From: Tubulanus polymorphus
Taxonomy: Eukaryota; Animalia; Nemertea
Length of the DNA: 64,000 bases
Assembly (NCBI RefSeq): GCF_964204645.1
Contig: NC_134031.1
Span: 19,785,910 to 19,849,909 of the forward strand
Reading direction: 5' to 3'
Shown: positions 16,601 through 56,481 of the stretch, in pieces
Numbering within the stretch: the first letter of the stretch is position 1
Layout: each line of letters starts with the position of its first letter
The notes under the pieces: model-generated
What the model saw: only the letters and a program-made list of their open reading frames with translations
Told to the model about the DNA's origin: nothing
Database searches by the model: none
Position numbers and translations under genes: made by a program

Positions 16601-18582
16601 CGAATAAGGCTTTGTAACAATTTGATATTTTGAGTCATATCGTGTATTATAGGATTTCACGGAATTTGAATCGCAGACAAGAAATGTAAAAGCTACGCGT
16701 TTAGGACGAAGCCAGCAGCGGCGGCTGATTCATTTCTTGGCGCGATGTTTTTCAAAGATGACGTGTATAGACGTGCATCATCAAACGAAAATCTAGATGA
16801 GAGGCGAAATCTGAAATTTGCTATTTGTCTCGTGTTGGTATCAGGTGTTATAATGTCGGCGATAATGGGTCGCGTTCGAAGCGCTTTCACTTCAACAGCT
16901 GCTGCGAGTGAGTTGAACTGCTCAGGACACGTGGTGATAAAACGAAAATCAATCCATTGACATTTTTCGAAGCCCGTTTCGATACCTCCAATAAAATATA
17001 ATTGGTATAACAATGTATTTATTAGCGTACGAAATGAATTGGCGTAACATTTGGTCTTTTTCGATCGTTCTATATATGAATTCAGGTTTAATGCGGTTCG
17101 ATAAATAATTGTATCAAGAATCTTTCGTTGATCTTTTAAGTCAATTACTGCGTTACGTTTTAAAGTATCTAAGTCAAAATGTCACTGCAGTGAATTGTAT
17201 TAGTTCTACGACGTTAGACGACGCCTACGTATAATGTCTCCTGACTGTACTCTAGACAGGTTATTCACCGAGGTTGAGTAGATTTTTCAATTCTAACTCG
17301 AGAAACAAAATGACGACGGAATCCTTAAAAGCGAACATAGTTTAGATAAGTTGTTCGATTCGCTGGGGCTCAGCCTACTCGACAAACAATATTTGATGTG
17401 ATATCTTATTATGAAAATAGATTTAGTCTCATACGAGTGTTATAACAAACCCTAAAGGGTATATTTTGTATTTCATCTAATAGCTCGGGGAAATACAGAA
17501 TATCGCTGTGAAAGTTCTCACATTTTCTGATATACTCATTCCGCGTTCGCTTCATTTATTCACGAAAAAAGATACAAGTTTATTGAAGTTGACGCCTGGT
17601 TCATGGCGTCATAGACATTTGAAGCGTCGCGTATCAAAAGCCGCTCCACGCCCTTTATTTCTAGAATTTAGATTTCAAATTCGCACGTTTCTATATCCGA
17701 TGTTCGATTTATATTTGACAGGAATGGGCGGTAATGAGAATCTAGATGGAGACCCTCTAGATCGCGACTACCAACAACAACCTCCCAGACAGAAACGCAT
17801 GCGCACTTCGTTCAAACACCACCAGTTACGGACGATGAAATCGTATTTTTCTCTAAATCACAATCCAGACGCAAAAGATCTCAAACAATTAGCACAAAAA
17901 ACTGGCTTGACGAAAAGAGTTTTACAGGTAACTATGATGTCCGGTTTTTTGAAATTAATGGGCCATTGCTTTGGAATATTTTCTCAGATGTTGAACTTGA
18001 TATTTAATATATATTGATATTTAACAAATATTAAAAATTTCAATAATTTTAGATCAGCTCTTGAAACCGTTCTATTCAATCTTATGGTTAGCCACACTTT
18101 TATTAAGAATCAATTTTTTCTGTAATTGCCTTACAGCAATATTTAACTAAATAAAGCACCAAATGTGGTATATAAGAATAATGATAATTACTGAATTCAA
18201 GGATATAAGTATTATGTGAAATGATCTTTCAATTATCAGTCGATAAGATACATGTTTATTCAAATAGTATCTGTCTGATATTTTCTAGGTATGGTTTCAA
18301 AATGCCAGGGCGAAATACCGACGGAATCTGTTACGTCAGGAGCAGCAACGCGACCCGAATTCGCAGTCGAACGGCGTAATGTCACCGGATTGTAAATCAC
18401 AGGACAGTTTACAGGAATTAACCGAACTGACGAACGCGCACTCACCGGGCGGATTATCAGACATCAGTTCCACTCCGTCGCTATCAGATCTCGGACATTC
18501 TATGGACAGCGAAGAGCATCAAAATGACACGGGCGGCAGTTTAACGGACCTTTTTAGCAGCAGTATTAATAACCTGAATTGA
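1690..18582 (+). CDS. LHX2/9: LIM-homeobox transcription factor Lhx2/9 (apterous); exons 1690-1821, 3832-4040, 13513-13847, 17722-17927, 18289-18582
   Basis: LIM1 CAGCSGRIVDRFYLMAVDKQWHTSCLKC..CFAKDGNIYCKEDYYR; LIM2 [35 protein letters not shown]..; linker QKGRPRKRK; homeodomain KRMRTSFKHHQLRTMKSYFSLNHNPDAKDLKQLAQKTGLTKRVLQ|VWFQNARAKYRR typical of Lhx2/9. All GT-AG junctions join in phase (0,2,1,0). Confidence 0.96.
6089..6235. repeat. Imperfect inverted repeat (MITE-like palindrome) in Lhx2/9 intron 2
   Basis: gatatttc..aagtttatttatc..gatttatcttaatcctatct is mirrored by agatgggattaagataaatc..gatagataaactt..gaatatc. Confidence 0.55.
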
Positions 18583-18802
18583 AAAACCGTATAAGTGGCG
18601 CTCGCGTGAATTGGAGAAAAGTACCACCGAAAACTCTTGTATCTGAAAAAGGAAATTAACAGAAAACAATATATATATATTTACCTTATAGTTTGAAATA
18701 GCTATAGATTTACTAAAATCCAAGATCAGTTTTCAAACAATAATGTGCTCCAAATCCATGGATTTTATTATGATGACAATCTTAAAATCAGAACTGTTGT
18801 AT

Positions 18803-18833
<31 letters not shown>

Positions 18834-19483
18834 GTGTACAGGTATAAATAAAATAGGCGTTCTACTTATTATTAAATTCATGACTTGATCTCGCGGTGTA
18901 CAACGAAAAAAGTTTTAATATCATTGTTTTTCCTAGAAATATCTACTGATCTCAGAGAAATGTCTTACGAATACATAGTATAATGATAAACATATACTTA
19001 GGGTTAGTTCCGCGTTTGGTATCAAAGTCTAAGATAAACTCTAATCAGCGTTTATAAGTCATTTTATTTTAAAATTTCGTGCAAAAAATATTCCCTTGAT
19101 TTTCAATCGATTGAATACTGTGTTGATTCGAAAATATTGAAGCATCGCGCTAGTTGTTAATACACTAAATATCTGTACCGGTTTTTGGTCATTGATATCA
19201 ATAATGTATATAACATTTAATAAGTGTTGTGAATAAAATATTGAGAAGATTAAATTATGAATAAAGATAAATCATTATTGTTATTTCTTTTTGTTTTCGT
19301 CATTTACTGTATTCGACGTGAGAAGGGCGCATCGTACGGGACAAATTGAACCAGAAAAAAAGTGAATAAGAACCCAAAGATGAAATGACTAATGACTAAA
19401 ATAACTATCAGGGTATAAGACTGGTCTGAATACCAGTTGTTATTACGGTCTCCTACAGCGTATGCCGCCAAAAGTATAAGATC

Positions 19484-19616
19484 GAGAGAATCCCACAATA
19501 ATAACGAAAAACCAGTCCGAAGATGACTATTAGGATACAGTCGAAACGTTGAATAAACTACACTAGCTTCAGTTACAATTTTGGACTGTTTTTCGTTATT
19601 ATTGCGGGATTCTCTC
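19484..19616 (+). mobile_element. Palindromic element with a degenerate hammerhead-like core (possible Penelope-like remnant), copy 1
   Basis: Arms gagagaatcccacaataataacgaaaaaccagtcc / ggactgtttttcgttattattgcgggattctctc; centre CCGAAGA-T-GACT..AGTC-GAAAC-GTTG. Confidence 0.55.
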
Positions 19617-20245
19617 TATATCGCTTTAACGCGGATATAGTTCTTTATCAATAGTGTTAGTTCGTGTGTCTTAGTGCAACGGCACAGATTTTAGTCCGCA
19701 GTGGAAGCTATTTTATCAAATAAACTCGACTAACGACTTTGAAAATTTGTTTTAAATATTTTTGATGATTTGTTCCGAGAAAATTAACCTTATGTGCACT
19801 TTCTCCCAAGACGTCGTTTTAAGGCTAGATATGGTACTAGACTAGATATAGACTAAACATCGAAAAATAATCGGCCTAAATACCTACTGGGCTCGCTTTT
19901 CTTTCTGAGTTTGGCATTTTCTATGTCATGAAACAGCAAAGCATAATCAAATCCATGGCATTAATCATACATTTTGGACCCTTAACTTCCCTTTCTCGAT
20001 TTCCTTCGCCTATCCAGCTCAAACAATATGTCGTCATTTATTAAACGGAAAATTTTGCGCTGCAAAGAGTATTTGAAGGAATGAAATCAATTGATACATT
20101 TTTCTATCATTTACATGAATGGGTTTGGAGAAATTTGAACGTACCGCGACATTCTTTCTCAACAAGCTCAATTGTAGAACCAATGCGCCATCTGTCGTAT
20201 TGTTGTGTGTCACTCAACGCGCGACTCTCCTCAATACTAAGTAAC

Positions 20246-20266
20246 GGGGATTCCCCGGGAATTTCA
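20246..20266 (+). promoter_or_regulatory. Tandem NF-kB (kappaB)-like sites upstream of zinc-finger gene copy 1
   Basis: GGGGATTCCCC immediately followed by GGGAATTTCA, 114-134 bp 5' of the ATG; C/EBP-ATF-like TGACGCAA at 20305-20312. Confidence 0.55.
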
Positions 20267-20379
20267 GCCCTATGTCACGCGACCAGGCTGTGTATTTACA
20301 TTACTGACGCAACAGTAAACTGTACATTGTACCTTCGAGTACTCCGACGAGATTGTACAGTCAGCATTAGCAACGCAAA

Positions 20380-21786
20380 ATGGAAGAAGCTTTTCCTTTA
20401 CAATGTACCGTCTGTAACAAGGTTTTTAATGGAGCTAACCCAGCAAAACATCATTATGATAGTGACAAACATAAAAGGAAGGCTGGAACGTTTGTTGGTG
20501 AAGAAACAAGTAAGAATATCGGCTTGTCTTTCATGAATAATCTTGATGATACTAGCAGTGTTACGAGCAGCGAGTACAATGAATTTGTAAATATATCGAA
20601 CCAAATGGCTTGCTTGAATTTGGGCATCAGAACCCCGAGTGAAGCTGGTTCCATGATCGCATCGACTGATACAGCCTCATCATTGGGCGTTTCCTCGTCA
20701 GGAGCTGCTGCAGCCAGTACTTTCGGGATGTGTAATCTGTGCAATATACTTTACACGTCACCAGAAGAAGCTAAGAAGCATTTGAATGGTAAAAAACACC
20801 TACGTAAAATGAAAATGGTGAATTTACTACCGGGAGCTAATAACGTTAGGGCTGATGTTACTATGGTTCAGTCCGCACCATACAGTGCACCAGTTCCGAA
20901 TCCGACCGTAAGCGTCATGGCATCGCCAACTTCTCCGCTCGGTGCGGGTCCACAACTGCTTCCTGTTCAAGCAGCGCATGTGGTGGTCGAAACGCCATCG
21001 AAACGACGACGATTCTGCGACATTTGCCGCTGTTACGTCGACACAGAAGAGATGTATGTAATCCACTGCGACAGCCCGAGTCACGTCTGGAAAGAGAAGT
21101 TGTTCATAAACGAGATGAAACAGCAGAAGAAACTCAAACGGCGAGGTATCCAGCACGTGGAAATGGCCAGGCCAGCTGATGATGGAAATAACGCTATATC
21201 TAATGCTTCCGCTGTCGTCGCCTCATCAAGACGTGACCAGCAGCAACATTTCTGCGACACCTGTTCGTGTTATTTAAACAGCGCCGAGCAGTTGAAACAA
21301 CATCAAGAAAGTCCACGACATATAACGCAAGATGAAATGAAGAAGAGAAACGCCTTTTTCCTTATTGGGCATAGCAACGATGGCGTGGCATCAACGGCGG
21401 CCGCATCTACAGGTCCACGTTCGAATCCATTGCTCGAACATTATTTACAAGATCAACGAGAGGCATCGCGACGAAGTGATTCTTCATCGCCGCCGTTTTC
21501 GTCAGCCATGTCGTCGATTACCGATAACCGATTCGTTACACCAGAACCCAGTGTGTTTGGTGACAGCACTGTGGAGCTATTGAATGCCGATCTCCGATCG
21601 GTTTCTGAAGTAATGAGGTCCGGTCACGGGGCTGTCGGAGACGGCCGAGCATCTTCGCTGATGTTACCGAGTATTCCGCCTCCGAGCAGGCTTTCAACAT
21701 ACTCGGACGCGACCGCCTCCGACTTGCACCAGTCTGAAATGTTCGAATTTTCTTCAAGTTTGTTGAATCGCTTGAACAAAGAATAA
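20380..21786 (+). CDS. Intronless protein with four matrin/U1/JAZ-type (C-x2-C-x12-H-x5-H) zinc fingers, ZNF385/ZNF346/ZMAT-like, copy 1 (468 aa)
   Basis: Fingers CTVC..HYDSDKH, CNLC..HLNGKKH, CDIC..HCDSPSH, CDTC..HQESPRH, separated by long Ser/Ala/Pro-rich linkers. The spacing matches dsRNA-binding zf-met/JAZ fingers. Confidence 0.88.
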   Translation: MEEAFPLQCTVCNKVFNGANPAKHHYDSDKHKRKAGTFVGEETSKNIGLSFMNNLDDTSSVTSSEYNEFVNISNQMACLNLGIRTPSEAGSMIASTDTASSLGVSSSGAAAASTFGMCNLCNILYTSPEEAKKHLNGKKHLRKMKMVNLLPGANNVRADVTMVQSAPYSAPVPNPTVSVMASPTSPLGAGPQLLPVQAAHVVVETPSKRRRFCDICRCYVDTEEMYVIHCDSPSHVWKEKLFINEMKQQKKLKRRGIQHVEMARPADDGNNAISNASAVVASSRRDQQQHFCDTCSCYLNSAEQLKQHQESPRHITQDEMKKRNAFFLIGHSNDGVASTAAASTGPRSNPLLEHYLQDQREASRRSDSSSPPFSSAMSSITDNRFVTPEPSVFGDSTVELLNADLRSVSEVMRSGHGAVGDGRASSLMLPSIPPPSRLSTYSDATASDLHQSEMFEFSSSLLNRLNKE

Positions 21787-23037
21787 GAATAAACGCCACT
21801 GACAATTGTCGACACTGATAATTTATGTTGATAGAAAATGTGTCTCTTCGCTGAACCTCGCTAGAACGATGACCGTGGGAAAATGAAAAGCATCGTACTA
21901 ACGATTTGATAAAAACAATTCCATAATTAACTCGACGGACAGAGAAATTTATTGCCTGTGTGGTCAGTACTACCGCGACCAGACAGGATTTGTTTTTAAG
22001 ATTACTTCAGGCCTGTAGGCCTAATTAAGAGAGATCGTCTCATTTTAATTCAGTAAATTTTCACGATATATGAACGAGCTAATATCAAACCGGTACTGTT
22101 CAGTCGATGGAATAGGTTTCTTGATGAGTTTTTAATGTAGTAATTATGGACCATCGTAAACATTTTTATAGGGAAATCCTATAAGAAAAGCCGGGAATTC
22201 TTAGATTCATCGTATTACTGAGGTTTCTTGTTGAAACGTACTAACGAGGTTCGACTGAAATAGCTATAGATTTACTAAAATCCAAGATCAGTTTTCAAAC
22301 AATAATGTGCTCCAAATCCGTGAATTTTATTATGATGACAATCTTAAAATCAGAACTGTTGTATGTAATATGTATATATATTTATATGTGTACAGGTATG
22401 AATAAAATAGGCGTTCTACTTATTATTAAATTCATGACTTGATCTCGCGGTGTACAACGAAAGAAGTTTTAATATCATTGTTTTTCCTAGAAATATCTAC
22501 TGATCTCAGAGAAATGTCTTACGAATACATAGTATAATGATAAACATATACTTAGGGTTAGTTCCGCGTTTGGTATCAAAGTCTAAGATAAACTCTAATC
22601 AGCGTTTATAAGTCATTTTATTTTAACGTTTCGTGCAAAAAATATTTCCTTGATTTTCAATCGATTGAATACTGTGTTGATTCGAAAATATTGAAGCATC
22701 GCGCTAGTTGTTAATACACTAAATATCTGTACCGGTTTTTGGTCATTGATATCAATAATGTATATAACATTTAATAAGTGTTGTGAATAAAATATTGAGA
22801 AGATTAAATTATGAATAAAGATAAATCATTATTGTTATTTCTTTTTGTTTTCGTCATTTACTGAATTCGACGTGAGAAGGGTGCATCGTACGGGACAAAT
22901 TGAACCAGAAAAAAAGTGAATAAGAACCCAAAGATGAAATGACTAATGACTAAAATGACTATCAGGGTATAAGACTGGTCTGAATACCAGTTGTTATTAC
23001 GGTCTCCTACAGCGTATGCCGCCAAAAGTATAAGATC

Positions 23038-23170
23038 GAGAGAATCCCACAATAATAACGAAAAACCAGTCCGAAGATGACTATTAGGATACAGTCGAAA
23101 CGTTGAATAAACTACACTAGCTTCAGTTACAATTTTGGACTGTTTTTCGTTATTATTGCGGGATTCTCTC
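23038..23170 (+). mobile_element. Palindromic element with a degenerate hammerhead-like core, copy 2 (inside the duplication)
   Basis: Same sequence as 19484-19616. Confidence 0.55.
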
Positions 23171-23799
23171 TATATCGCTTAAACGCGGATATAGTTCTTT
23201 ATCAATAGTGTTAGTTCGTGTTTCTTAGTGCAACGGCACAGATTTTTGTCCGCAGTGGAAGCTATTTTATCAAATAAACTCGACTAACGACTTTGAAAAT
23301 TTGTTTTAAATATTTTTGATGATTTGTTCCGAGAAAATTAACCTTATGTGCACTTTCTCCCAAGACGTCGTTTTGGGGCTAGATATGGTACTAGACTAGA
23401 TATAGACTAAACATCGAAAAATAATGGGCCTAAATACCTACTGGGCTCGCTTTTCTTTCTGAGTTTGGCATTTTCTATGTCATGAAACAGCAAAGCATAA
23501 TCAAATCCATGGCATTAATCATACATTTTGGACCCTTAACTTCCCTTTCTCGATTTCCTTCGCCTATCCAGCTCAAACAATATGTCGTCATTTATTAAAC
23601 GGAAAATTTTGCGCTGCAAAGAGTATTTGAAGGAATGAAATCAATTGATACATTTTTCTATCATTTACATGAATGGGTTTGGAGAAATTTGAACGTACCG
23701 CGACATTCTTTCTCAACAAGCTCAATTGTAGAACCAATGCGCCATCTGTCGTATTGTTGTGTGTCACTCAACGCGCGACTCTCCTCAATACTAAGTAAC

Positions 23800-23820
23800 G
23801 GGGATTCCCCGGGAATTTCA
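23800..23820 (+). promoter_or_regulatory. Tandem NF-kB-like sites upstream of zinc-finger gene copy 2
   Basis: GGGGATTCCCCGGGAATTTCA, identical to copy 1. Confidence 0.55.
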
Positions 23821-23930
23821 GCCCTATGTCACGCGACCAGGCTGTGTATTTACATTACTGACGCAACAGTAAACTGTACATTGTACCTTCGAGTACTCCG
23901 AGATTGTACAGTCAGCATTAGCAACGCAAA

Positions 23931-25337
23931 ATGGAAGGAGCTTTTCCTTTACAATGTACCGTCTGTAACAAGGTTTTTAATGGAGCTAACCCAGCAAAAC
24001 ATCATTATGATAGTGACAAACATAAAAGGAGGGCTGGAACGTTTGTTGGTGAAGAAACAAGTAAGAATATCGGCTTGTCTTTCATGAATAATCTTGATGA
24101 TACTAGCAGTGTTACGAGCAGCGAGTACAATGAATTTGTAAATATATCGAACCAAATGGCTTGCTTGAATTTGGGCATCAGAACCCCGAGTGAAGCTGGT
24201 TCCATGATCGCATCGACTGATACAGCCTCATCATTGGGCGTTTCCTCGTCAGGAGCTGCTGCTGCCAGTACTTTCGGGATGTGTAATCTGTGCAATATAC
24301 TTTACACGTCACCAGAAGAAGCTAAGAAGCATTTGAATGGTAAAAAACACCTACAGAAAATGAAAATGGTGAATTTACTACCGGGAGCTAATAACGTTGG
24401 GGCTGATGTTACTATGGTTCAGTCCGCACCATACAGTGCACCAGTTCCGAATCCGACCGTAAGCGTCATGGCATCGCCAACTTCTCCGCTCGGTGCGGGT
24501 CCACAACTGCTTCCTGTTCAAGCAGCGCATGTGGTGGTCGAAACGCCATCGAAACGACGACGATTCTGCGACATTTGCCGCTGTTACCTCGACACAGAAG
24601 AGATGTATGTAATCCACTGCGACAGCCCGAATCACGTCAAGAAAGAGAAGTTGTTCATAAACGAGATGAAACAGCAGAAGAAACTCAAACGGCGAGGTAT
24701 CCAGCACGTGGAAATGGCCAGGCCAGCTGATGATGGAAATAACGCTATATCTAATGCTTCCGCTGTCGTCGCCTCATCAAGACGTGACCAGCAGCAACAT
24801 TTCTGCGACACCTGTTCGTGTTATTTAAACAGCGCCGAGCAGTTGAAACAACATCAAGAAAGTCCACGACATATAAAGCAAGTTGAAATGAAGAAGAGAA
24901 ACGCCGCTTTCCTTAATGGGCATAGCAACGATGGCGTGGCATCAACGGCGGCCGCATCTACAGGTCCACGTTCGAATCCATTGCTCGAACATTATTTACA
25001 AGATCTACGAGAGGCATCGCGACGAAGTGATTCTTTATCGCCGCCGTTTTCGTCAGCCATGTCGTCGATTACCGATAACCGATTCGTTACACCAGAACCC
25101 AGTGTGTTCGGTGACAGCACTGTGGAGCTATTGAATGCCGATCTCCGATCGGTTTCTGAAGTAATGAGGTCCGGTCACGGGGCTGTCGGAGACGGCCGAG
25201 CATCTTCGCTGATGTTACCGAGTATTCCGCCTCCGAGCAGGCTTTCAACATACTCGGACGCGACCGCCTCCGACTTGCACCAGTCTGAAATGTTCGAATT
25301 TTCTTCAAGTTTGTTGAATCGCTTGAACAAAGAATAA
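23931..25337 (+). CDS. Intronless four-finger matrin/JAZ-type zinc-finger protein, copy 2 (468 aa)
   Basis: Intact ORF of the same length as copy 1, with 13 amino-acid differences. Confidence 0.88.
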   Translation: MEGAFPLQCTVCNKVFNGANPAKHHYDSDKHKRRAGTFVGEETSKNIGLSFMNNLDDTSSVTSSEYNEFVNISNQMACLNLGIRTPSEAGSMIASTDTASSLGVSSSGAAAASTFGMCNLCNILYTSPEEAKKHLNGKKHLQKMKMVNLLPGANNVGADVTMVQSAPYSAPVPNPTVSVMASPTSPLGAGPQLLPVQAAHVVVETPSKRRRFCDICRCYLDTEEMYVIHCDSPNHVKKEKLFINEMKQQKKLKRRGIQHVEMARPADDGNNAISNASAVVASSRRDQQQHFCDTCSCYLNSAEQLKQHQESPRHIKQVEMKKRNAAFLNGHSNDGVASTAAASTGPRSNPLLEHYLQDLREASRRSDSLSPPFSSAMSSITDNRFVTPEPSVFGDSTVELLNADLRSVSEVMRSGHGAVGDGRASSLMLPSIPPPSRLSTYSDATASDLHQSEMFEFSSSLLNRLNKE

Positions 25338-26353
25338 GAATAAACGCCACTGACAATTGTCGACACTGATAATTTATGTTGATAGAAAATGTGTCTCTTC
25401 GCTGAACCTCGCTAGAACGATGACCGTGGGAAAATGAAAAGCATCGTACTAACGATTTGATAAAAACAATTCCATAATTAACTCGACGGACAGAGAAATT
25501 TATTGCCTGTGTGGTCAGTACTACCGCGACCAGACAGGATTTGTTTTTAAGATTACTTCAGGCCTGTAGGCCTAATTAAGAGAGATCGTCTCATTTTAAT
25601 TCAGTAAATTTTCACGATATATGAACGAGCTTATATCAAACCGGTACTGTTCAGTCGATGGAATAGGTTTCTTGATGAGTTTTTAATGTAGTAATTATGG
25701 ACCATCGTAAACATTTTTATAGGGAAATCCTATAAGAAAAGCCGGGAATTCTTAGATTCATCGTATTACTGAGGTTTCTTGTTGAAACGTACTAACGAGG
25801 TTCGACTGAGATGTTTAATTTTTTTCAAGTTTTGTTGATCGATTCGCTTGAACATGGCACAATGTTTATGAAAGCTTTATATATATATCTTCTTTAATGT
25901 TTGTAAATTAACACAATAATTGCAGAATCATTAAAATTAAATTCTCTGCGGTGTCAGCTACATCACTTGTGAGCAGGTTGTAAAAATGTTTGAATAAATG
26001 AATACGTTATGTCAGTAGTTTGTCTATTACATACAGCCTTCCGTACACCACTCCAAGCCAGTCCTCGCTCGCCGTGAACTAAACTCCCGAAATCAATTAC
26101 ATAAACAACTAAAATCATATATTTACGATACAAATAGAATTTTATTATTATTATTCACAGTTATTTGTTATGTATCGGCACAAATACATGTAGATAGACA
26201 CACGCCAATACATTCCCCACGTGACGCGAAGCCATTTTCCGTAAATTGGTTTGAAAATGAGCTAAAATAATCAAGTTCTTTTTCCCGATTGTTCACATAT
26301 TTTTTTTCTCATTTTAAACAAACACATTAATGATAAAGAGATTTCTAATGAAA

Positions 26354-33857: not shown

Positions 33858-36800
33858 ATGAAAGTGGAAATAATGGACGATAAACCTTCTGATAAAGGTA
33901 ATTAATTCATCTTTTCTCATTAGATTCTTCATTTTTCATGTGCGCTATAGTTTATAGATTATCGTTAGATTCACTGTTTGTGTTTATTGTAAATGAAAGC
34001 GTCGCAAATTCGATGTTTTGTAGTCGATTTTTCCAAGAAAGTAGTCTGTGATTAAAACGTTCGTTCTGATCCGATTCAATTTTTGCAGCAGTTGTTATTG
34101 TTTTTACCGATTTGCAAGAGGTCCTGCAACTCAGTGTTCATTGACGGTGTGATGTTTGCCAAGCATTCAGATATTTGTTGATGGTTATTCTTAAACATTC
34201 CAAATTGTTAAAATGTTTGTCTACATCCGAGCCAGTAGGCAGTGGTGTTTATTCCCGGCCCTTTATCCATGGTGTGTCAAGGATTCTGGTTTAGGTGGTA
34301 GGGATACTACTGGTGTTCTACAGGTTTCTCAGTCAGTATTTCGCCTTGTCTTTTGTTCACCTCCTAGCGACCAATGGATGTTCCAGACTCCAGAGGCTCC
34401 TCAGCTTGAGCAGAAAACTGCTTGGTTCACTAGCTGTCTCCTGTCAGTCAGTAGCACAACAATCATGGCTTAGTAGATTTTGAGTCCAGTGTATGTCCAT
34501 CTGGGTTAACTATAGATATACCAATCTGATGTTAAACCACTTGGATTTGTCATGACATCAGCACTAAGGTTTAGGCTAGTATCAAGTCATAGCTACCAGT
34601 GACTGTAGTGAAGCACTCTTGCATGCAATTTACTAGGAAAAATGTCTTTATTTCTGAACCACGTATAAGAAAATGTGCTAGGCCTATTTCAATTGATGGA
34701 AAACTCAATCTTTTTGGAGTGATTTTACCCTGTCATAACATATTCGGGCAGTTTATCGCCTACCTAGCTGTTATCTAGGTTATGAACTTAAGTTTAAGGA
34801 GATTTTTTTAGTGGAATATTTTGTATTCATATCATTTATGAACTCGAGGATATTTTTATCATTTGCCTATAGTTTATTTCAAGTGTTTATTCTAAAGGCA
34901 GGTCTTTATTTAGATTGTGAATGCCACTTCTGCCCTCAATGGTCTTCTATCTCAGTTGATAATTACACGCATGAAATCTGTGACCCCGAAGTGCATTCAA
35001 TAAGGGCGGCTGATTTTTTCGCACACTTTGCAAGATACAATGTTTAAGCCAGACGAATAATAAATTATCCGCCTGGAGAACTACCCTCTCAGACATTTGA
35101 TACTTTAAGCACTGTTCTTCAATTTCTTATGGTCAAGGCTTCTCATGACGTGTTCAGTACTTCACCTGAAGTATCTTAAAATCAAAATCAACTACAAACA
35201 CCAGACATTAGGATATTCTAATAGTGCAGTTTCAGCAACTGATTGTCCGCGCTTCGCTTTGCAATGGTAAATGTCGTCCAAAGGGATGATTCTAGGCTGC
35301 AGATTTAAAACAAATGAATTAGATATCAGACAATGCCTGAATACAATACTAATCTGAGGCTAATCTAAATTCAACAATGAACCAAAGTATTTTGTTAACT
35401 GAAATTAGACAGACGGTTCGTAAACACGCCTTTCACCAATTCATTCAGTCATCATAAATAAAAAGAACCATCTCAATATTCAATAGCTATTTTTTCGATG
35501 GTGCTTCGATCATAGATTGAAGGGTTTTGTGGGTACTGCTCGGAAGAGTGTGTGTGAATGACTGTTGTAGAGGAATGTTTCGCAGAATATTTCTTACACG
35601 AATCTCGAAAACCATTGACACGAATCGGTATAGACTGTATTCACTACTCAGTGTAATAGCGTACCAGTCAGTCGGTCGGTCTCCACCCATTGTATTCAGT
35701 TAGTACCGCGCTAGTCTAACTATCTAATACCGGGCGAAGTAGATACTTATTATTATCACTGGTAATGTATTGATGTTTCCTATCGATTTATATCTCGTCT
35801 ATGCTTCTACTGTGCATTCATTTGGTATTTTTTCAAACGCTGAAATCGATTGATTTCTCACCTGTCTCTATCGATAGAAATAAGCTGTTTTTATGCATTT
35901 GTTCCTATTGGGATAATGTGTTAATTCTCGGTTTCGTTTGTTTCTATGGGGAAATAAGATAAAACTAACTAATTGCGTTCGATTGAATTCACTTCAGCTG
36001 ACAATTTGTTCCGATGTTCGTGAGCTTTGTTGTTATACAAAATTCTAAACAATCTGAAGATAGATTTTAGATTAGAGAATCTCCTTATCAGATATAACAT
36101 AATATATCTTTCAAAATTGAAAAATCTCGAGAAAGTGCCGACTTTAGATATATATTGGTTGGTTATATTTGTTGTCTGATTTTTGTCTCTCTCCTTGTTT
36201 CTTCCACAGGCATTGAGGCATTCTGAGAGTGTTGTTGCCGTGTGAATGTGGATCAGATAAGAAGAGAGAGAGAAAGGAGTGAGATGATATTAATAATATA
36301 TCTAAAACGTACAAAAAATCACGCAAAAAAGTTGACTCGAAAGAAACTAGTAAAAAAACTTCCGCATTTACTTAGTGTTAACAACTGAGGATTTTAACAT
36401 TTCTAGATACAGCAGCAGCAGCAGTTAGTGCTGGTCGGGTTATATTCACTGTTCTCAGAGAGCTACCACTCGGTCGGTCGTCGATGTAAAGTTAGTTTTT
36501 GCGGTGTGTATGTACAGCTCACAGTATTGGATATAACAGTTCTACGAACAAAAAGCCTCCTAACGTTTAGCTGTATGCGCCGCGCGCTGAAACAAGTTAC
36601 CGGTAAAATACATTACACTCACACATCAATTGATGCTCGAATCTATATTTATTAATTTGTGACTAGCGTTTGATTGAACGGTCTCTCGCAGACGCCCCGC
36701 GGTCTTTTACGAATCATCAGTAGAAATATTCGTTCTTATTTATCGTTGTTGAAACGAGTCTGGAACGATGAACGAACCGATGACGAACGGACCGACGAGC

Positions 36801-39800
36801 TCGAGTCACGTCGAGTTATTCGTACGCGCCGGACAGGACGGTAAATGTTACGGAGCGTCGCCGTTTTGTCAGCAAGTGTTCATGATCTTGTTGTTGAAAG
36901 CCGACGACGATTCGTTGTCGTTCCGCGTGACGACGGTCAACCCGGCGAAATCGCCGCCCGAGTTCAAGAAGCTGTCGAATCGTCTTCCGACGCTCGTTCA
37001 CGGCAACGAGGTACGTAAAAACTCGGACGAGATCATCGAATACATCGACGAAACGTTTCCGAAACCGTCGCTCGCGTACGACGACCGAAACGCCGAATCC
37101 GTCTGTCTCGAGGTGTTCTCGAAATTCGCGTATTACCTGAAAGAGGTTTCGCGTTCGCCGACGCAGCTAATCACCGAACTCGGTAAAATTAACGAATTCC
37201 TCGACGCGGTCGGAACGCGGTTTCTCTGCGGCGATCATCTCACGCATCTCGATTGTTTGATGTTGCCGAAGCTGCACCACATCCGCGTGACGGTGAAAGC
37301 GTATAAAGACTTCGAGATACCCGCCGAGTTCCGCGCGTTGTGGCGCTACCTGAAGAATGCGTATGAGACGGACACGTTCCAGAAGAGTTGTCCTTCCGAC
37401 CAGGAGATCGTTTATTACTGGTCGGAGAAGCCGGAGACTCCGCAGCTGCCGACGGAGGCCGCTGTGAAATACGCTCCGACTGGAGATCCGTTTTATTCGT
37501 GGGATACACCGCTTTAAACTGCTGCGGAATTATTCGCTTATTCGCGCATCGTGTTTATACAAAACGGCCAAGCTTTACAAGAATTAAACAGCCAAGCTTT
37601 ACAAGAATTAAACAGCCAAGCTTCACAAGAATTAAACTGCCAGGCTTTACAAGAATTAAACAGCCAAGCTTCACGAGAATTTGGAAAAGCGTAAGATTGA
37701 AAAATATAAATGGATTCGACAAGTACGGGAAATACCGCAGGGCCGTACATAGGGAGAGAGTTGCCCCCAGATATTTTGGGATAGAGTACCCTTTTCACAA
37801 ATATTATTGTCATATCTAATAGAATTCACTGATGGTATTGACTTAGCAATTTATTATATAATTGGAAAATCGTTTTTGATTTGAGGTAACTGCCCTATTT
37901 CTGGTTTCTCTGTCCCCCCCCCCCTACATTCGAATGCTGTTTACGGCCCGGGACGGTCATAGAGAAGGGCTTCCGAATATGAAGTCATCAGATGACACAT
38001 TTTACGTGTGAGAGTTGGAGAGGATAGAGAAAAGAGTTTGATGTGGTTTTCGAGATGCTCAATATAGTAGTTTGCTTATACAGCTTCAGTCTGTAGTGAA
38101 GAATGATATTCATATACATAAGTATATTTAATAGTAGCTTTAGATTTCGAATAGAAAGAAATTCATTTACACTTATGAAAGTATTGCACTTTAGTAGATT
38201 AGATCTCTGTAATGTTGGGCAGCATTTGTTGAAGCGACTTTGAATGACTTATCCCAGTAGTAGTTAGTGTTTAGATGCTGGTTATGTTAGAAATACAGCT
38301 CTAACTCACCCTTCGGACATCCACCCAATGATGATCGCTTTTTGAGGTAAAATGTCTAATATCTGGTGTTCCTTTTCAAAATTAAATCTGTGAAAAAAAT
38401 TAGAGGTATTGTTGTATGATGAACGTGTAAAGTATGGAATGTCTGAAAGATCGCAGGGTTAGGTCATTACAGTAACTGTACCCGTAGACTAGTATACCTG
38501 ACCTCCCGCCCAAAACACTTAAACAAAAGTGGGCATCATACAAACTGGGATAGTCAAACATAGCTTCCAGAGAAACCAAGCCCAGTATTTGATTTATTAC
38601 ATAAAGATCTGATTAGTTTAGTTAAAGTTTCTGTTGTCGATGTTTTTATTCATTGATATTTAATTCATCTGTGTTTTTTACGAAGTTGGTTTTTGTGGCA
38701 TTTTGTACAGAAATATTCACATTCTGTCCTGATGTATTTTTCTCTGTGCATTTCATAATCGATTGCTGTATTTATTCCTATATCATTAATAACAGGGTTT
38801 CCAGTGGTCCTTCCAAGTCCTTCTTTTGGAAAAAGTTTGGACAAACATCATCTTTGTCCTTCCTTTTGATGAAAGTCCTTCCGATTTTAATTTTATTTTA
38901 TTACTCAGGCCTGTTAATTCAATTGTCAGTGAGAATGAATATTCTGAAAAATGTAAGACTGGTCTACATGACTATTAGTATTCCGGTGAAGGCATTGCAA
39001 AAAAAGGCCCTCACTTTACTGGAAAGAACTTCTTTCTGAGTCCAAAAGTCCCTCTCTTGGGTCTTAAATTGCCGAAAAGTCCTTCTTAGTACTTCTTTTT
39101 ACCCTGGCCTTACCACTGGAAACCCTGTTAATATTATTATTATTATTATTATTCAATCTTAATCATCAGCTATTGATTGTTTTATGGTTCATCTATTTAA
39201 TGTTTTGTCAGTTTTCTTACTCAGTATTTTAAATACCAGTATAAACTGTCATATATGTTCATCTATTTGATGTTTTGTCAGTTTTCGTACTCAGTATTTT
39301 AAATACCAGTATAAACTGTCATCATATCGTCATGTTTTACCTGTTTATCGAATGTCATATCAATTTTTTTCACTTTATTTTTGACGGGTTAAGATGCATG
39401 CAAGCTAGAAAAAAATGTCCTATGTTTTTCAGTGATCTGAGTTAAGAATTAGAAAAGTATTATTTCTTTATTTATATGTGTATTTTTGTGTCATTAGCCA
39501 AATGATTATTTTTTCAAAACTTTGTCTTCCCTGAATTTTGAATACACTTGTACGGATTGTAATCGGTGCTTATTTTATTTCACTATGTAATACATTTACC
39601 AGTAATGAAATATGTAATGCGTTAATGTTAAAAATAAGTGATGTCACCAATGCAGGTATTGATCTCCTGCCTAGGGTTATTCCTGATATCAAGTATTTGT
39701 ACATGGAGTAAATTTTTCATTGAAAATGTCCTGGATCCAGTTCCGCAGTTGTGAGTTAGAAATTCAAGTTGAGAGTTAACTCCAAGTAGTAATTAGTTGT

Positions 39801-51435: not shown

Positions 51436-51807
51436 AGAGTTTTTGCTTATCGTTTCACTTTCACTTTCAGAGTTTTAGCTTATCGTTTCGCTATCACTTT
51501 CAGAGTTTTAGCTAATCATTTATAAGCCCTCACTTTCAGAGTTTTAGCTTATCGTTTCGCTATCACTTTCAGAGTTTTAGCTTATCGTTTCGCTATCACT
51601 TTCAGAGTTTTAGCTAATCATTGATAAGCCCTCGCTTTCAGAGTTTTAGCTTATCGTTTCGCTATCGCTTTCAGAGTTTTAGCTTATCGTTTCGCTATCA
51701 CTTTCAGAGTTTTAGCTAATCATTTATTAGTCCTCACTTTCAGAGTTTTAGTTTATCGTTTAGCTATCACTTTCAGAGTTTTAGTTTATCGTTTAGCTCA
51801 CACTTTC
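51436..51807 (+). repeat. Minisatellite of 33-bp (A) and 36-bp (B) units forming a 102-bp higher-order repeat, in laccase intron 1
   Basis: Units start tcactttcagagttttagct at 51461, 51494, 51530, 51563, 51596, 51632, 51665, 51698, 51734, 51767. Confidence 0.95.
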
Positions 51808-52831: not shown

Positions 52832-55632
52832 ATGGGCGTTTTAACAGCGACTGCGGTTTTCCTGTCGGGAGTGTTCGTGTCGACGGTTATGGGTGCGTCG
52901 ATGCCGAAAGGGTTCGGCGAAAAGCAACAAGTCGAATGTCGACCAGAATGGAAGAAATGCACGTACAAATTTATCATTCACGAGAAGTTAACGATGATGA
53001 AATACAAACAGATGTTGTATCCGTACGAGGGTAAGTTATACCCGTGTTACGTGAAGAGTCCACCTGGTAACGATACAGCCCCGATTCCACCGAGTGAGAT
53101 CATCCCTGCAGACGGCTGGACCCAGTCGCGCGTCGTATACGTCGTCAATAATAGCATGCCAGGGCCGCCTGTCGAGGTTTACGAAGGTCAGACGGTAGTT
53201 ATAGAGGTACATAATGCTATGCGCAGCGAGAGTACATCTCTACACATGCACGGGTTACATCAGAAAGGTACTCCGTTCATGGACGGGGTAGCATTCGTCA
53301 CCCAATGCCCGATACTTCCCGGTCAGAGTTTCACGTACAGATTCAAAGTCAAACAGTTGGGCACGTATTGGTACCACGCCCACGTCGGGGCGCAGCGATC
53401 GATGGGCATCTACGGGGCGTTTATAATTCGACCGAAACCGAAATCACAAATCGAATTGGACAATATAAAAATGAACGAACACGTAGTAATGTTGAGCGAC
53501 TGGAACCACGACTGGGAATCGATGAACAGTTATTTACGGATGGTATTAGGCGGTTTCGACGGACTGGTGAAAACTAAGGCCAGTCAATCGCTAGATGGCA
53601 TGCATTATAGTAATTTCCGATTCCAGAGTGGGTTAATAAACGGTCTCGGGCGTTACTATAATCCCGATACGGGTAAACACAACGACGCGCCGCTTACTGT
53701 ATTCACAGTGAAACACAACCAAACCGTTCGATTACGTGTAATCGCCGCCGGTAATCTATATCCATTCCGAGTATCCGTAGACAATCACCAGCTGAGGGTA
53801 ATCTCGTCCGACGGGATGGACGTCGAACCGACTGAGGTCGAATCCGTCATCATCAATCCGGGAGAGCGATACGATGTGGTGATCGATACCGATCAGACGG
53901 CAGGTAATTATTGGATTCGAGCCGTGACGTTAGAAGTGGGCAAGAAATATCACATCGCCGAGGCCATATTGCGCTACGAAGGCGCGCCTGACGCGGAACC
54001 GATTACTGAAAGGAAGAAGTGTACCAGTAATGACGTGTGTATGGTGGTTAACTGTCCTTTCCTTTACTACCCCGAATCAGATTATACGAAATGCATCACC
54101 GTCGACCAACTGAAAAATACGCAGAACGACACAGTTCCCGAATACGAGCTGGGAAAATCGAAAGAATACTTTTTGAATTTCGCGTTTCCCGGCGCGGACT
54201 GGACTCCCGGTTCGGTAAATGGTCACGCGTTTACCGAGTCTGGAATATCGGCATTAACTCAACCCGAACTGTTCAAGCCATCGTGCAGCCCTACCGAGTG
54301 CGGTGAAGAGAAAACCTGTCTTTGTACGTTAACTCTCGATTTGAAATATAACGACACCGTTCAGATGGTGCTGATGAATTTAGGGCGTGGTCGGGGCTGG
54401 GCGCACCCCATGCATCTACACGGCCATAGCTTTTACGTCGTGAAAATGGGTTTTGCCGATTACGACAACGTCACCGGTAAACTGACAAATGATACGAAAG
54501 ATATCGATTGTCGCGGCAACCCCGATCCTAAACAGTCGTATTGTAACAAGGCCGCGTGGTCGAACTCGAGCTGGGGCGGCGACGATATTCCGGGAATCAA
54601 CTTGGAAAATCCGCCACGTAAAGATACGGTTATCATACCAAGCGGTGGATATGCGGTTATCCGCATCAAAGCGGATAATCCGGGTGTGTGGATCTTCCAC
54701 TGTCACATAGAGATGCATAATTTGGACGGTATGTCGATGCTCGTAACCGAAGCACTCGATCACGTCCCGCCGATACCGAAACGATTCCCTACTTGTCACG
54801 GGTTCGAATTTACCGACGCAGATGAGGAGGAATACGAGAAAGTGTTAGCGAGCAGCTCTGGTAAGTCGACCACGATAGCGCTTTAATGCGGGATATAGCT
54901 GAATAAACAAAACCGCCGTGTTCTTTACTATTGTCGATTGAGAATGTTATCGAATATCTGGAACAAGTTATTTAAAAAAATAATTGGCGCTACCAAAATT
55001 CCATCTCAATCAAGTATTATGCAAGTGACCAAGGACGGATCTAGGGGCGGACTGGGCGGACTGGTCCACCCCATTCAATATTTGAATGTGCCTGCCAAAA
55101 GTTCTGGATATTCTTATTGCATAGAAAATATTCAAAGATGAAAATAAATCCGAATGGGTCCTGTTTAGTGATAAGGACCAGAACTGCCCGTTTCGATCCT
55201 AAATGTGGGAGGGCCACCAGAACCCCCACGAATGGTCGCGCTTGTAGCCCTCGCATTGCCAAATCTGCCATTTCCAAATTAAGAGCCCGTTTTCACGTCC
55301 ACCCCTTTCAAATAATTCTATATCCGCCCTTGGTGACGTCACGGTGCGTCTTATTGGCGTCACATTTGACGTCAAGCGCTAGCTGAAGTAGAGAGTCACA
55401 TTGACGGTTAACAAGTCCGTGCGCGTACCCCTGTATTACTTCGTAATCCTTCAGATTGCTTGATAATGAATACATCTTTAATTAAACGAGATTAAAGTTA
55501 TTCATACTTATAACTTGATTATTTTTCTTGAATCTATTTCCAGGTTCTCGTTTGGTACCTACCGCATTCCCGACGTCGTGTCTGTTATTTGTTCTGTGGT
55601 TGTTTTATTTAAAGTCAATTGTACATCATTGA
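52832..55632 (+). CDS. Laccase-type multicopper oxidase; signal peptide, exons 52832-54860 and 55544-55632 (hydrophobic, GPI-signal-like tail); 5'UTR exon ends at 51316
   Basis: Four Cu-binding motifs: HMHG, YWYHAH, HPMHLHGH, HCHIEMHNLDGM (axial Met). Donor G|GTAAGT at 54861 joins TTTCCAG|GT at 55544 in phase, giving GSRLVPTAFPTSCLLFVLWLFYLKSIVHH*. Confidence 0.93.

Positions 55633-56159: not shown

Positions 56160-56481
<322 letters not shown>

What the first reader, a model, noticed from the sequence alone, without database searches (positions are those of the whole stretch)
20380..25337. Young duplicate dsRNA-binding-type zinc-finger genes diverging almost only by amino-acid changes, repeatedly at the same finger position
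Seen: comparing the two CDSs by eye gives 13 amino-acid differences (16 nt) but only 2 synonymous changes (GCA/GCT, TTT/TTC). The non-coding flanks are nearly identical and both ORFs are intact. The residue two positions after the last Zn-ligand His differs in three of four fingers: ZF2 R/Q (CGT/CAG), ZF3 W/K (TGG/AAG), ZF4 T/K. ZF1 differs at His+3 (K/R). Two of these changes need two substitutions within one codon. Known: in JAZ/ZNF346-type fingers the basic helix around the His ligands contacts dsRNA. Inference: the nucleic-acid-binding surface is being retuned under diversifying selection, as expected of a host-conflict (antiviral or anti-transposon) gene. The counts are small, so this is suggestive only.
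Basis: partly seen in the sequence, partly recalled or inferred. Interest (0 to 1): 0.85.

Follow-up and report, generated by a model that had tools for sequence, protein, structure and literature searches.

The report
Fast-changing duplicated RNA-binding zinc-finger genes

Summary
Two intact 468-codon ORFs (20380-21786, 23931-25337) lie in a head-to-tail 3.55-kb tandem duplication in Tubulanus polymorphus. They differ by 16 nonsynonymous and 2 synonymous nucleotides (13 residues), including H+2 in three of four zf-met/JAZ-type fingers. The duplication is real: 3-bp microhomology at the breakpoints, an independent 2014 contig crossing the junction, and about 2x read depth in an unrelated DNA run. 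RNA-like contigs show an intronless transcript.

One claim is wrong. The upstream flank is as diverged (1.0%) as the CDS (1.3%), and adjacent double substitutions also occur in non-coding DNA.

Gene-wide dN/dS is 1.8, or 1.46 against non-coding plus synonymous sites (CI 0.75-2.85). That is not above 1, but strong purifying selection is excluded. The positional clustering is significant (P about 0.002 after register correction). It falls on positions that are basic in about two thirds of 886 related fingers and lie near RNA in U1-C. Reads reveal a third ZF3 allele with four more replacements in the same patch, and also an H308Y allele that destroys a zinc ligand.

Verdict: a credible but unproven candidate for selection on the RNA-binding surface. 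A host-conflict driver is untested.

The parts
18694..22258 (+). Tandem duplication unit 1 (upstream region, gene copy 1, proximal 3'UTR)
   Evidence: Self-BLAST shows 98.7% identity over 3,565 bp to 22256-25809. All 36 substitutions and 2 indels are mapped.
22256..25809 (+). Tandem duplication unit 2 (upstream region, gene copy 2, proximal 3'UTR)
   Evidence: In DNA run X8, depth over 23252-25555 averages 12.1, against 6.4 on the unique right flank.
22256..22258 (.). Duplication junction with 3-bp microhomology TGA, shared by the start of the unit and the first bases of the right flank
   Evidence: Boundary sequences. X3 contig 22143-22361 crosses the junction with 0 mismatches, and the X2 1,938-nt contig runs from the CDS into 22285.
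20380..21786 (+). Copy 1 CDS, 468 codons, intronless
   Evidence: ORF. Pfam zf-met 54.7 bits and zf-C2H2_jaz 48.9 bits. The RNA-like contig is colinear with the genome.
23931..25337 (+). Copy 2 CDS, 468 codons, intronless
   Evidence: ORF and Pfam. It is 97% identical to copy 1.
20404..20472 (+). ZF1 of copy 1 (C9-H31); K34R lies at His+3 just after it
20731..20799 (+). ZF2 of copy 1 (C118-H140); R142Q at His+2
   Evidence: This finger aligns to ZFa and JAZ fingers in the PDB.
21016..21084 (+). ZF3 of copy 1 (C213-H235); V220L in strand 2
   Evidence: The AF2 model has pLDDT above 90 for residues 217-246.
21076..21090 (+). Hypervariable patch, codons 233-237 of ZF3 (copy 2: 24627-24641). Three alleles are seen: P-S-H-V-W, P-N-H-V-K and Q-K-H-D-R.
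   Evidence: The third allele appears in X8 (9 of 13 reads) and in an X3 contig.
21253..21321 (+). ZF4 of copy 1 (C292-H314); T316K and D318V follow on helix 2. H308 is the ligand changed to Y in 6 of 14 X8 reads (copy-2 coordinate 24852).
21787..22737 (+). 3'UTR of copy 1; it crosses the junction into the start of unit 2, so its distal part is new sequence
   Evidence: X2 and X3 contigs reach 22737 and 22729. Apart from one AATAAA overlapping the stop, no canonical poly(A) signal lies inside the unit; the next ones are at 22401, 22425 and 22786.
25338..25999 (+). 3'UTR of copy 2, keeping the ancestral 3' end in the unique right flank
   Evidence: Poly(A) signals at 25930, 25936 and 25993. X3 contig 25800-25999.
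21559..22258 (+). Homogenised 3' segment (last 76 codons plus proximal 3'UTR): 1 difference in 700 bp from its partner 25110-25809
   Evidence: Poisson P = 0.0018 against the rate in the rest of the unit.
20246..20256 (.). Palindromic kB-like site GGGGATTCCCC about 100 bp upstream of where the RNA contigs begin (20348); an identical site lies at 23800-23810
   Evidence: Its presence is suggestive only.

Best explanation
This is a real, recent, microhomology-mediated tandem duplication in the ribbon worm Tubulanus polymorphus. It carries a transcribed, intronless, lineage-restricted gene. The protein has four widely spaced U1-like/JAZ-type (zf-met) fingers, the class that grips the sugar-phosphate backbone of RNA duplexes, followed by a long Ser-rich tail. 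The breakpoint lies inside the ancestral 3'UTR, so copy 1 has acquired a new 3' end. Since the duplication (about 1% divergence) the coding sequence shows no detectable purifying selection. Amino-acid replacements are concentrated on the first turns of the second helix of each finger, at positions H-1, H+2 and H+3. The family normally keeps these basic, and in solved relatives they face the RNA. The most likely reading is that selection, not drift alone, is re-patterning the charges with which the fingers hold RNA. In the reference copy 1 this mostly removes them. The duplicates, and alleles of them, would then differ in RNA affinity or preference. Shown: the duplication, its junction, transcription, the counts, the positional clustering and the fold class. 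Inferred: RNA binding, that the variable residues contact RNA, and that selection is the cause. The driver (virus, transposon, dosage, subfunctionalisation) is unknown.
For: Duplication: self-alignment; TGA microhomology; a junction-spanning contig from a 2014 study; and X8 depth of 12.1 against 6.4 on the flank, with copy-specific letters at about 56% of reads. Only two copies plus one 30%-identical intronless paralogue exist in the 268-Mb genome. Transcription: X2 and X3 cover only 20348/23899 onward and skip the intergenic part, and a 1,938-nt contig is colinear with the genome, so there is no intron. Family: Pfam; ZFa and JAZ alignments; AF2 helix-kink-helix models; best structural matches are U1-C (Z 5.7, rmsd 1.9, 51 residues), spliceosomal U1-like fingers and the JAZ ZF3-dsRNA entry (Z 5.6). 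Constraint: NG86 dN/dS 1.8; dN against non-coding plus synonymous sites 1.46, CI 0.75-2.85. Clustering: P = 0.0023, 0.0003, 0.0021, 0.0026, 0.0024 and 2e-5 in the various tests. H+2 is basic in 66% of 886 related fingers, H-1 in 68% and H+3 in 60%. RNA-facing: U1-C R28/K29 lie near phosphates and E32 near the RNA 5' end (PMC4383343); the JAZ-based model places the basic residues of the kinked helices on dsRNA (PMC6488673). Out-of-sample: a third ZF3 allele (P233Q, N234K, V236D, K237R) occurs in two other studies. No donor for gene conversion was found in the window or the paralogue.
Against: The N:S excess is not significant (P = 0.11 to 0.39). Non-coding divergence equals coding divergence, as neutrality predicts. 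Intact ORFs carry no weight: P(no stop in 18 substitutions) = 0.5 and P(no indel) = 0.19. H308Y, which removes a zinc ligand, is at 6 of 14 reads in X8. Nine of the 18 copy-1 letters, including two of the three His+2 differences, are seen in no run. They may belong to one rare allele, and rare radical changes are what a decaying copy would carry. The derived states (K to W, K to T, R to Q) move away from the family consensus. Substitutions come in tight clusters in non-coding DNA too, so a mutational process contributes. Two independent clusters in the same 13 bp of ZF3 could mark a mutational hot spot. The finding was picked out of a very large scan because of its pattern, which weakens the P values. 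RNA binding was never measured.
Confidence: 0.5

Rival explanations
1. Neutral decay after duplication. With two redundant copies, purifying selection is lifted and substitutions accumulate at the neutral rate. The concentration near the last His is then chance plus clustered (multi-nucleotide) mutation or a local hot spot, and the reference copy 1 is a degenerating allele.
For: Omega is compatible with 1 (CI 0.75-2.85). Non-coding divergence of 1.0% compares with dN 1.4% and dS 0.8%. Five adjacent double substitutions are split between CDS (3) and non-coding DNA (2). H308Y destroys a zinc ligand in about 43% of X8 reads. Copy-1 private changes are radical, depart from the family consensus, and are unseen in other runs. 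Scan-wide selection of the pattern inflates its significance.
Against: Under neutrality, replacements should be spread evenly, or if anything prefer the 77% of the protein made of linkers and tail. Instead 5 of 13 hit the 12 normally basic positions (P = 2e-5), and 3 of 4 fingers are hit in one register (P about 0.002). The mutation types and sequence contexts at the three His+2 codons differ, so a shared hot spot is unlikely. An independent allele hits the same ZF3 patch with four more replacements.
Confidence: 0.38
2. Specifically a host-conflict gene: an NF-kB-inducible dsRNA sensor or restriction factor in an arms race with viruses or transposons. This is a narrower version of the best explanation.
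For: The replacement pattern on the putative RNA-facing patch and multiple alleles at ZF3. A palindromic kB-like site about 100 bp upstream of the transcript start in both copies. Human ZNF346 binds dsRNA and was recently reported to promote PKR activation (bioRxiv 10.64898/2026.06.03.729416).
Against: There are no expression data under infection. The kB-like motif count is not above chance once the palindrome and the duplication are counted once. These fingers contact the backbone rather than the bases in solved relatives, so it is unclear what a pathogen-driven race at these positions would discriminate. The protein is not an orthologue of ZNF346; similarity is confined to the fingers. The ligand-destroying allele is common in one sample.
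Confidence: 0.15
3. Assembly artefact: two alleles of a single-copy gene wrongly placed in tandem.
For: The copy divergence of about 1.2% is within the range of allelic divergence expected for a marine invertebrate (my own knowledge). In contig set X1 the mean word depth over the copy (54-57) is only about 1.2x that of the flank (46).
Against: A contig from an independent 2014 study crosses the end-of-unit to start-of-unit junction with no mismatch, and a 2024 RNA-like contig does the same. In an unrelated raw-read DNA run, depth is 1.9x the flank, with a flank depth of 6.4 against about 7.2 expected genome-wide. The breakpoints are clean with 3-bp microhomology. Contig word depths after bubble popping are a poor measure of copy number.
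Confidence: 0.04

Closest known systems
ZNF346/JAZ (human) and dsRBP-ZFa (Xenopus): dsRNA-binding zinc-finger proteins (Pfam zf-C2H2_jaz PF12171, zf-met PF12874)
   Same: Same finger type: C-x2-C-x12-H-x5-H, a basic K-H-x-K-K patch and a helix-kink-helix. It has four fingers, as JAZ does, separated by long non-TGEKP linkers. ZF2 aligns to ZFa and JAZ fingers, and the ZF3 model superposes on the JAZ ZF3-dsRNA entry 2mkn at Z 5.6.
   Different: It is not an orthologue; similarity is confined to the fingers. The linkers are longer (86, 72 and 56 residues), there is a 154-residue Ser-rich tail, and the gene is intronless. The family appears restricted to this lineage, with one distant paralogue. 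ZF3 and ZF4 have S-P instead of the usual G-K before the last His. RNA binding is untested.
U1-C, and other spliceosomal proteins with U1-like fingers in the matched U11 snRNP, pre-B/B-complex and Bact entries
   Same: These are the best structural matches (Z 5.5-6.0). They hold an RNA duplex by backbone contacts from the first helix, strand 1 and the residues flanking the last His (PMC4383343).
   Different: Those proteins have a single finger, are highly conserved, and are embedded in snRNPs. Here there are four fingers in a fast-changing, duplicated gene.
KRAB zinc-finger genes and PRDM9: tandemly duplicated classical C2H2 genes with positive selection at the DNA-contact positions of each finger (my own knowledge, not tested here)
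   Same: Young duplicates in which the same within-finger positions, on the nucleic-acid-facing helix, are replaced again and again while the zinc ligands and the scaffold stay.
   Different: Those are classical DNA-binding fingers that read bases, arranged in long tandem arrays with TGEKP linkers, and their selection is well established statistically. Here the fingers are the RNA-duplex type that contacts the backbone, only two gene copies exist, and the selection is unproven.
Rapidly evolving antiviral RNA-binding proteins such as PKR and ZAP (my own knowledge)
   Same: RNA-binding host factors in which replacements cluster on interaction surfaces.
   Different: In those proteins the selected surfaces mostly face viral antagonists or specific RNA features, and the evidence comes from deep phylogenies. 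No link to immunity has been shown here.

Membership tests
zf-met / zf-C2H2_jaz (U1-like, JAZ-type) zinc-finger family | Pfam profile match above the gathering threshold | tested here: met
   PF12874 scores 54.7 and 55.1 bits against a cut-off of 21.2. PF12171 scores 48.9 and 48.7 bits against 22.6. Both copies match.
zf-met / zf-C2H2_jaz (U1-like, JAZ-type) zinc-finger family | Ligand spacing C-x2-C-x12-H-x5-H, with all ligands present | tested here: met
   Four fingers in each copy; all 16 ligands are intact in the reference. An H308Y allele exists in run X8.
zf-met / zf-C2H2_jaz (U1-like, JAZ-type) zinc-finger family | Beta-hairpin plus helix-kink-helix fold, superposable on solved members | tested here: met
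   AF2 models of ZF3 and ZF4 have pLDDT 81.6 and 79.3, with strands, helix, kink and a long second helix. VIA Z is 5.6-6.0 to U1-C, B-complex fingers and JAZ ZF3. These Z values are middling, as expected for 56 residues.
dsRNA-binding ZF proteins of the JAZ/ZFa kind | Several such fingers separated by long, non-TGEKP linkers | tested here: met
   Linkers of 86, 72 and 56 residues. The criterion is stated in PMC5100589.
dsRNA-binding ZF proteins of the JAZ/ZFa kind | Preferential binding of double-stranded RNA | not testable with these tools
   Needs a binding assay. It is inferred only from the family and the fold.
Orthologue of vertebrate ZNF346 | Full-length, colinear similarity beyond the fingers | tested here: not met
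   In the exhaustive HMMER search all non-self hits match by finger stretches only, and the best are molluscan multi-finger proteins of 350-1,800 aa.
Gene under positive or diversifying selection | dN/dS significantly above 1 | tested here: inconclusive
   1.8 by NG86, with P = 0.20 (binomial) and 0.39 (Fisher). P = 0.11 under a mutation model. 1.46 against non-coding plus synonymous sites, CI 0.75-2.85.
Gene under positive or diversifying selection | Replacements concentrated on an interaction surface, recurrently at the same positions | tested here: met
   P about 0.002 (register-corrected) and 2e-5 for the family-basic positions. A third ZF3 allele occurs in other samples. That these positions face RNA is inferred by analogy.
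Gene under positive or diversifying selection | Signal reproduced with more alleles and orthologues (site models, MK test) | not testable with these tools
   No orthologue is in the protein collections. Only one read-laying run was allowed.
True tandem segmental duplication | Junction present in independent data and doubled depth | tested here: met
   X3 contig 22143-22361 has 0 mismatches. The X2 contig crosses into 22285. X8 depth is 12.1 against 6.4 on the flank.

The most novel reading that the evidence does not exclude
U1-like/JAZ-type RNA-duplex-binding fingers can be the substrate of a KZFP/PRDM9-style diversification. On this reading, a ribbon worm has a young, possibly NF-kB-driven pair of dsRNA-binding genes under diversifying selection at the backbone-contacting positions flanking the last zinc ligand, with several functionally distinct alleles segregating. 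That would point to an invertebrate RNA-sensing or RNA-silencing factor in conflict with viruses or transposons.
Probability: 0.15. Interest if true: 0.7.

Novelty: new member of a known kind. Interest (0 to 1): 0.4.

Why it matters
If selection is confirmed, this would be the first case I know of in which the RNA-duplex-binding (U1-like/JAZ) class of zinc finger, rather than classical DNA-reading fingers, diversifies at its nucleic-acid-facing positions. A search of the held literature found no precedent. It would also provide a small, tractable pair of natural variants, plus a third allele, for asking how the basic patch around the last His sets RNA affinity or preference. And it would give a candidate innate-immunity or RNA-regulation gene in Nemertea, a phylum with almost no functional genetics. 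If it is only decay after duplication, it is an ordinary young duplicate on its way to losing one copy.

Tried and rejected
1. Gene conversion from another finger or from the paralogue as the source of the clustered changes: no donor within 1 mismatch for the cluster segments, or within 4 mismatches for the 21-nt third-allele segment, in the window or the paralogue locus. Short templates cannot be excluded.
2. Orthologues for a proper site-model test: the word-indexed search found only the query itself; the exhaustive search found only finger-level hits; the paralogue search was blank; and the look-up of encoding contigs had no record.
3. Using the paralogue to polarise changes: at 30% identity, with a one-residue gap right after the last His of ZF3 and ZF4, it is not informative.
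4. Burge et al. 2014, the primary JAZ-dsRNA paper (PMC3985865), is not held. I used what two citing papers say and the U1 snRNP crystal paper instead.
5. kB-like motif enrichment: 9 matches against 2.3 expected, but 8 of them are one palindromic site counted four ways in each of two copies, so there is no real excess.
6. The sigma-70 promoter and terminator scan does not apply to an animal genome, and I ignored it.
7. Copy number from Logan contig word depth in X1 (1.2x the flank) is ambiguous, because bubble-popped mosaic contigs mix one-copy and two-copy words. I relied on the raw-read run instead.
8. Intact ORFs as evidence of constraint: rejected, since P = 0.5 for no stops and 0.19 for no indels under neutrality.
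9. A sequence search of the ZF3 segment alone against the PDB gave only a chance hit.

The gene has no introns, so no spliced model was needed.

Full report
WHAT IS THERE. The window comes from chromosome-scale contig C7 of a 268-Mb animal genome. A neighbouring intronless laccase gene matches a RefSeq protein of Tubulanus polymorphus at 100% identity, so this is a palaeonemertean ribbon worm. Self-alignment shows one head-to-tail tandem duplication, 18694-22258 and 22256-25809. The two units are 98.7% identical, with 36 substitutions and two indels: 8 bp in an AT run and a 3-bp CGA. The start of the unit and the first bases of the right flank share TGA, so the junction carries a 3-bp microhomology. 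That is typical of a simple replication- or end-joining-based tandem duplication. Each unit holds one 468-codon ORF.

THE OBSERVATION. The protein has four C-x2-C-x12-H-x5-H fingers, with the last His at residues 31, 140, 235 and 314. It passes Pfam's zf-met and zf-C2H2_jaz thresholds.
- The differences fall at His+3 of ZF1 (K34R).
- At His+2 of ZF2, ZF3 and ZF4 (R142Q, W237K, T316K).
- At His-1 of ZF3 (S234N) and His+4 of ZF4 (D318V).
- In strand 2 of ZF3 (V220L).
- Six lie elsewhere: E3G, R157G, F326A, I329N, Q359L and S369L.
One statement is wrong. The upstream non-coding 1,686 bp carries 17 substitutions and both indels (1.0%), about the same as the CDS (1.28%). Only the last 700 bp of the unit (the final 76 codons plus the proximal 3'UTR) is nearly identical, with 1 difference (Poisson P = 0.0018). 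This points to recent gene conversion or to constraint on that part.

IS THE DUPLICATION REAL, AND IS THE GENE USED? I laid four public runs on copy 2 plus the junction and the right flank (4,301 letters).
- In X8, an unrelated raw-read DNA run, depth averages 12.1 over 23252-25555 and 6.4 on the unique flank. About 7.2 is expected genome-wide from the amount of data read. Copy-specific letters sit near one half of the reads (53 of 94 over eight sites, including the CGA indel at 7 of 14).
- A contig of X3, from a different study dated 2014, covers 22143-22361 across the junction with no mismatch.
- A 1,938-nt contig of X2 runs colinearly from 20348, 32 nt before the ATG, through the CDS and across the junction to 22285.
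- X2 and X3 cover the transcript region at high depth and leave the intergenic part empty, so they behave like RNA. A 2014 T. polymorphus cDNA data set is described in PMC4986456. Equating it with X3 is my inference, because the run ids are coded.
So the two loci are real, the gene is transcribed, and it has no intron.
Apart from an AATAAA that overlaps the stop codon, there is no canonical poly(A) signal before the end of the unit. The breakpoint therefore lies in the ancestral 3'UTR. Copy 2 keeps the old 3' end (signals at 25930-25993; X3 contig to 25999). Copy 1 reads into new sequence (contigs to about 22737).
In X2 only copy 1's private 3' part is covered. Yet the X2 CDS contig mixes copy-1 and copy-2 letters. 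This could mean both copies are expressed and the assembler merged them, or that this animal's copy 1 differs from the reference. I could not resolve which.

WHAT KIND OF PROTEIN. The exhaustive profile search found 391 relatives, all matching through finger stretches only. The nearest named ones are molluscan 'ZNF346-like' and 'ZNF385B-like' proteins. The genome holds one distant, 30%-identical paralogue 5 Mb away. It is also intronless and has the same four-finger layout. No orthologue exists in the collections.
AlphaFold models of ZF3 and ZF4, built with 90 related fingers, are confident over the finger itself. They show a beta-hairpin, a helix carrying the first His, a kink at the Ser before the S-P motif, and a long second helix that begins two residues before the last His. 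The best structural matches are RNA-duplex-binding U1-like fingers: U1-C (Z 5.7, rmsd 1.9 over 51 residues), fingers of spliceosomal pre-B/B and Bact complexes, the JAZ ZF3-dsRNA entry (Z 5.6), and TUT1/TUT4. These Z values are modest, as they must be for 56 residues. The assignment to this family rests mainly on the Pfam match.

SELECTION OR DRIFT?
Gene-wide, the data do not show positive selection:
- NG86 dN = 0.0144 and dS = 0.0080, so omega = 1.8, with P = 0.20 (binomial) and 0.39 (Fisher).
- Under a codon mutation model, P = 0.11 per nucleotide, and 0.35 if substitutions within 10 bp are merged into events.
- Against non-coding plus synonymous sites, omega is 1.46 with a 95% interval of 0.75-2.85.
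This interval excludes ordinary purifying selection. Intact reading frames add nothing.

Where the replacements fall, however, is not random:
- Three of four fingers are hit in the same register (P = 0.0023 over 34 registers).
- Six changes lie in the best 6-residue window (P = 0.0003).
- With merged events, all four fingers are hit within one such window (P = 0.0026).
- Under the mutation model the register test gives P = 0.0024.
Across 886 fingers from 150 relatives, H-1, H+2 and H+3 are the most conserved non-ligand positions, basic in 68%, 66% and 60%. Five of the 13 changes hit these 12 positions (P = 2e-5). By ligand register (U1-C ligands Cys6, Cys9, His24 and His30 are from my own knowledge, consistent), U1-C R28/K29 correspond to H-2/H-1 and E32 to H+2. 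In the U1 snRNP crystal structure R28 and K29 lie by the RNA phosphates and E32 lies by the RNA 5' end. A paper using the JAZ-dsRNA model places the basic residues of the kinked helices on the RNA. Relaxed constraint alone would predict changes in the linkers and tail, which make up 77% of the protein, rather than here.

POPULATION EVIDENCE CUTS BOTH WAYS.
For selection: X8 (9 of 13 reads) and X3 carry a third ZF3 allele with four linked replacements at H-2, H-1, H+1 and H+2 (P233Q, N234K, V236D, K237R). The five codons 233-237 therefore exist in three forms, with no synonymous change among them.
Against selection:
- X8 carries H308Y in 6 of 14 reads, which removes a zinc ligand of ZF4.
- Nine of the 18 copy-1 letters (E3, S234, the T of the W237 codon, T316, D318, both letters of F326, I329 and the synonymous F393 site) appear in no run. 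Two of the three His+2 differences may therefore belong to one rare allele.
- The derived states (K to W, K to T, R to Q) lose the consensus charge.
- Two independent substitution clusters in the same 13 bp could also mean a mutational hot spot.
- The finding was chosen from a very large scan because of its pattern, so the P values are optimistic.

VERDICT. I put about 0.5 on selection-driven change of the RNA-facing patch. I put 0.38 on neutral decay with chance or mutational clustering and 0.04 on an assembly artefact. The specific host-conflict story gets 0.15, as a subset of the first. Its only extra support is a palindromic kB-like site about 100 bp upstream of the transcript start in both copies. 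That motif is not enriched in the window once the palindrome and the duplication are counted once. Human ZNF346 has recently been linked to PKR activation, but this gene is not its orthologue.

COMPARISON AND NOVELTY. The protein works like the JAZ/ZFa class and is a member of the zf-met/JAZ finger family, but it is not an orthologue of any named gene. The evolutionary pattern resembles KRAB-ZNF and PRDM9 genes, where the nucleic-acid-facing positions of each finger are replaced repeatedly. Here, though, the finger class contacts the RNA backbone rather than DNA bases. I found no report of this for U1-like fingers in the held literature. On present evidence this is a new member of a known kind: a young tandem duplicate with lifted constraint and a suggestive site pattern. 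It is a reasonable candidate for follow-up and not yet a demonstrated case. The scan had noted this same stretch once before (s1-516434, my own finding) and the kB-like sites separately (s1-516502).

Noticed in passing
window 23073-23210 and 19519-19656: A dispersed repeat of about 140 bp lies inside each duplication unit, upstream of the gene. It has at least 135 matches across the genome, some within arrays of 50-bp sub-units spaced 69 bp apart, and with inverted partners. Raw-read depth there exceeds 1,000x in X8, with many strand-switch joints. It looks MITE-like or satellite-like.
   Followed up: partly
window 20246-20256 and 23800-23810: A palindromic kB-like site GGGGATTCCCC, followed by GGGAATTTC, lies about 100 bp upstream of where the RNA contigs start, and is identical in both copies. 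The motif count in the window is not above chance once the palindrome and the duplication are counted once.
   Followed up: partly
window 21559-22258 vs 25110-25809: The last 76 codons and the proximal 3'UTR are almost identical between the copies: 1 difference in 700 bp, where 8.6 are expected (P = 0.0018). This indicates recent gene conversion or constraint on this part.
   Followed up: partly
window 22244-22963 and 25556-25843: In DNA run X8 the AT-rich distal part of the unit (GC 29%) and the end of the unit have almost no reads at 95% likeness or better, although the rest of the unit has about 12x. That animal is either much more diverged there or differs structurally.
   Followed up: no
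window 22256-25809 (run X1): In contig set X1 the word depth over the copy is only about 1.2x that of the flank, not the roughly 1.7x expected for two fixed copies. The duplication could be heterozygous (polymorphic in copy number) in that animal, or the measure may be unreliable.
   Followed up: no
window 17508-18017 (+): A 169-aa ORF with a homeodomain (Pfam E = 1.7e-11) lies about 700 bp left of the duplication's left breakpoint.
   Followed up: no
window 52832-54886 (+), 36768-37517 (+), 57312-58415 (+): Three further long single-exon ORFs: a three-domain multicopper oxidase (laccase; RefSeq LOC141908958), a CLIC-like protein, and a rhodopsin-family/Srw-like GPCR. Intronless genes seem frequent in this window.
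   Followed up: partly
window 56163-56478 and 51436-51807: A perfect (AT)158 microsatellite, and a 33/102-bp tandem repeat (3.6 copies of the 102-bp unit, 93% matches).
   Followed up: no
G000:C7:14843831-14844691 (L003 901-2379, minus strand): A distant paralogue of 492 aa. It is intronless, has the same four fingers and a Lys-rich coiled tail, is not present as this ORF in the protein collections, and has no detectable relatives by word-indexed search.
   Followed up: partly
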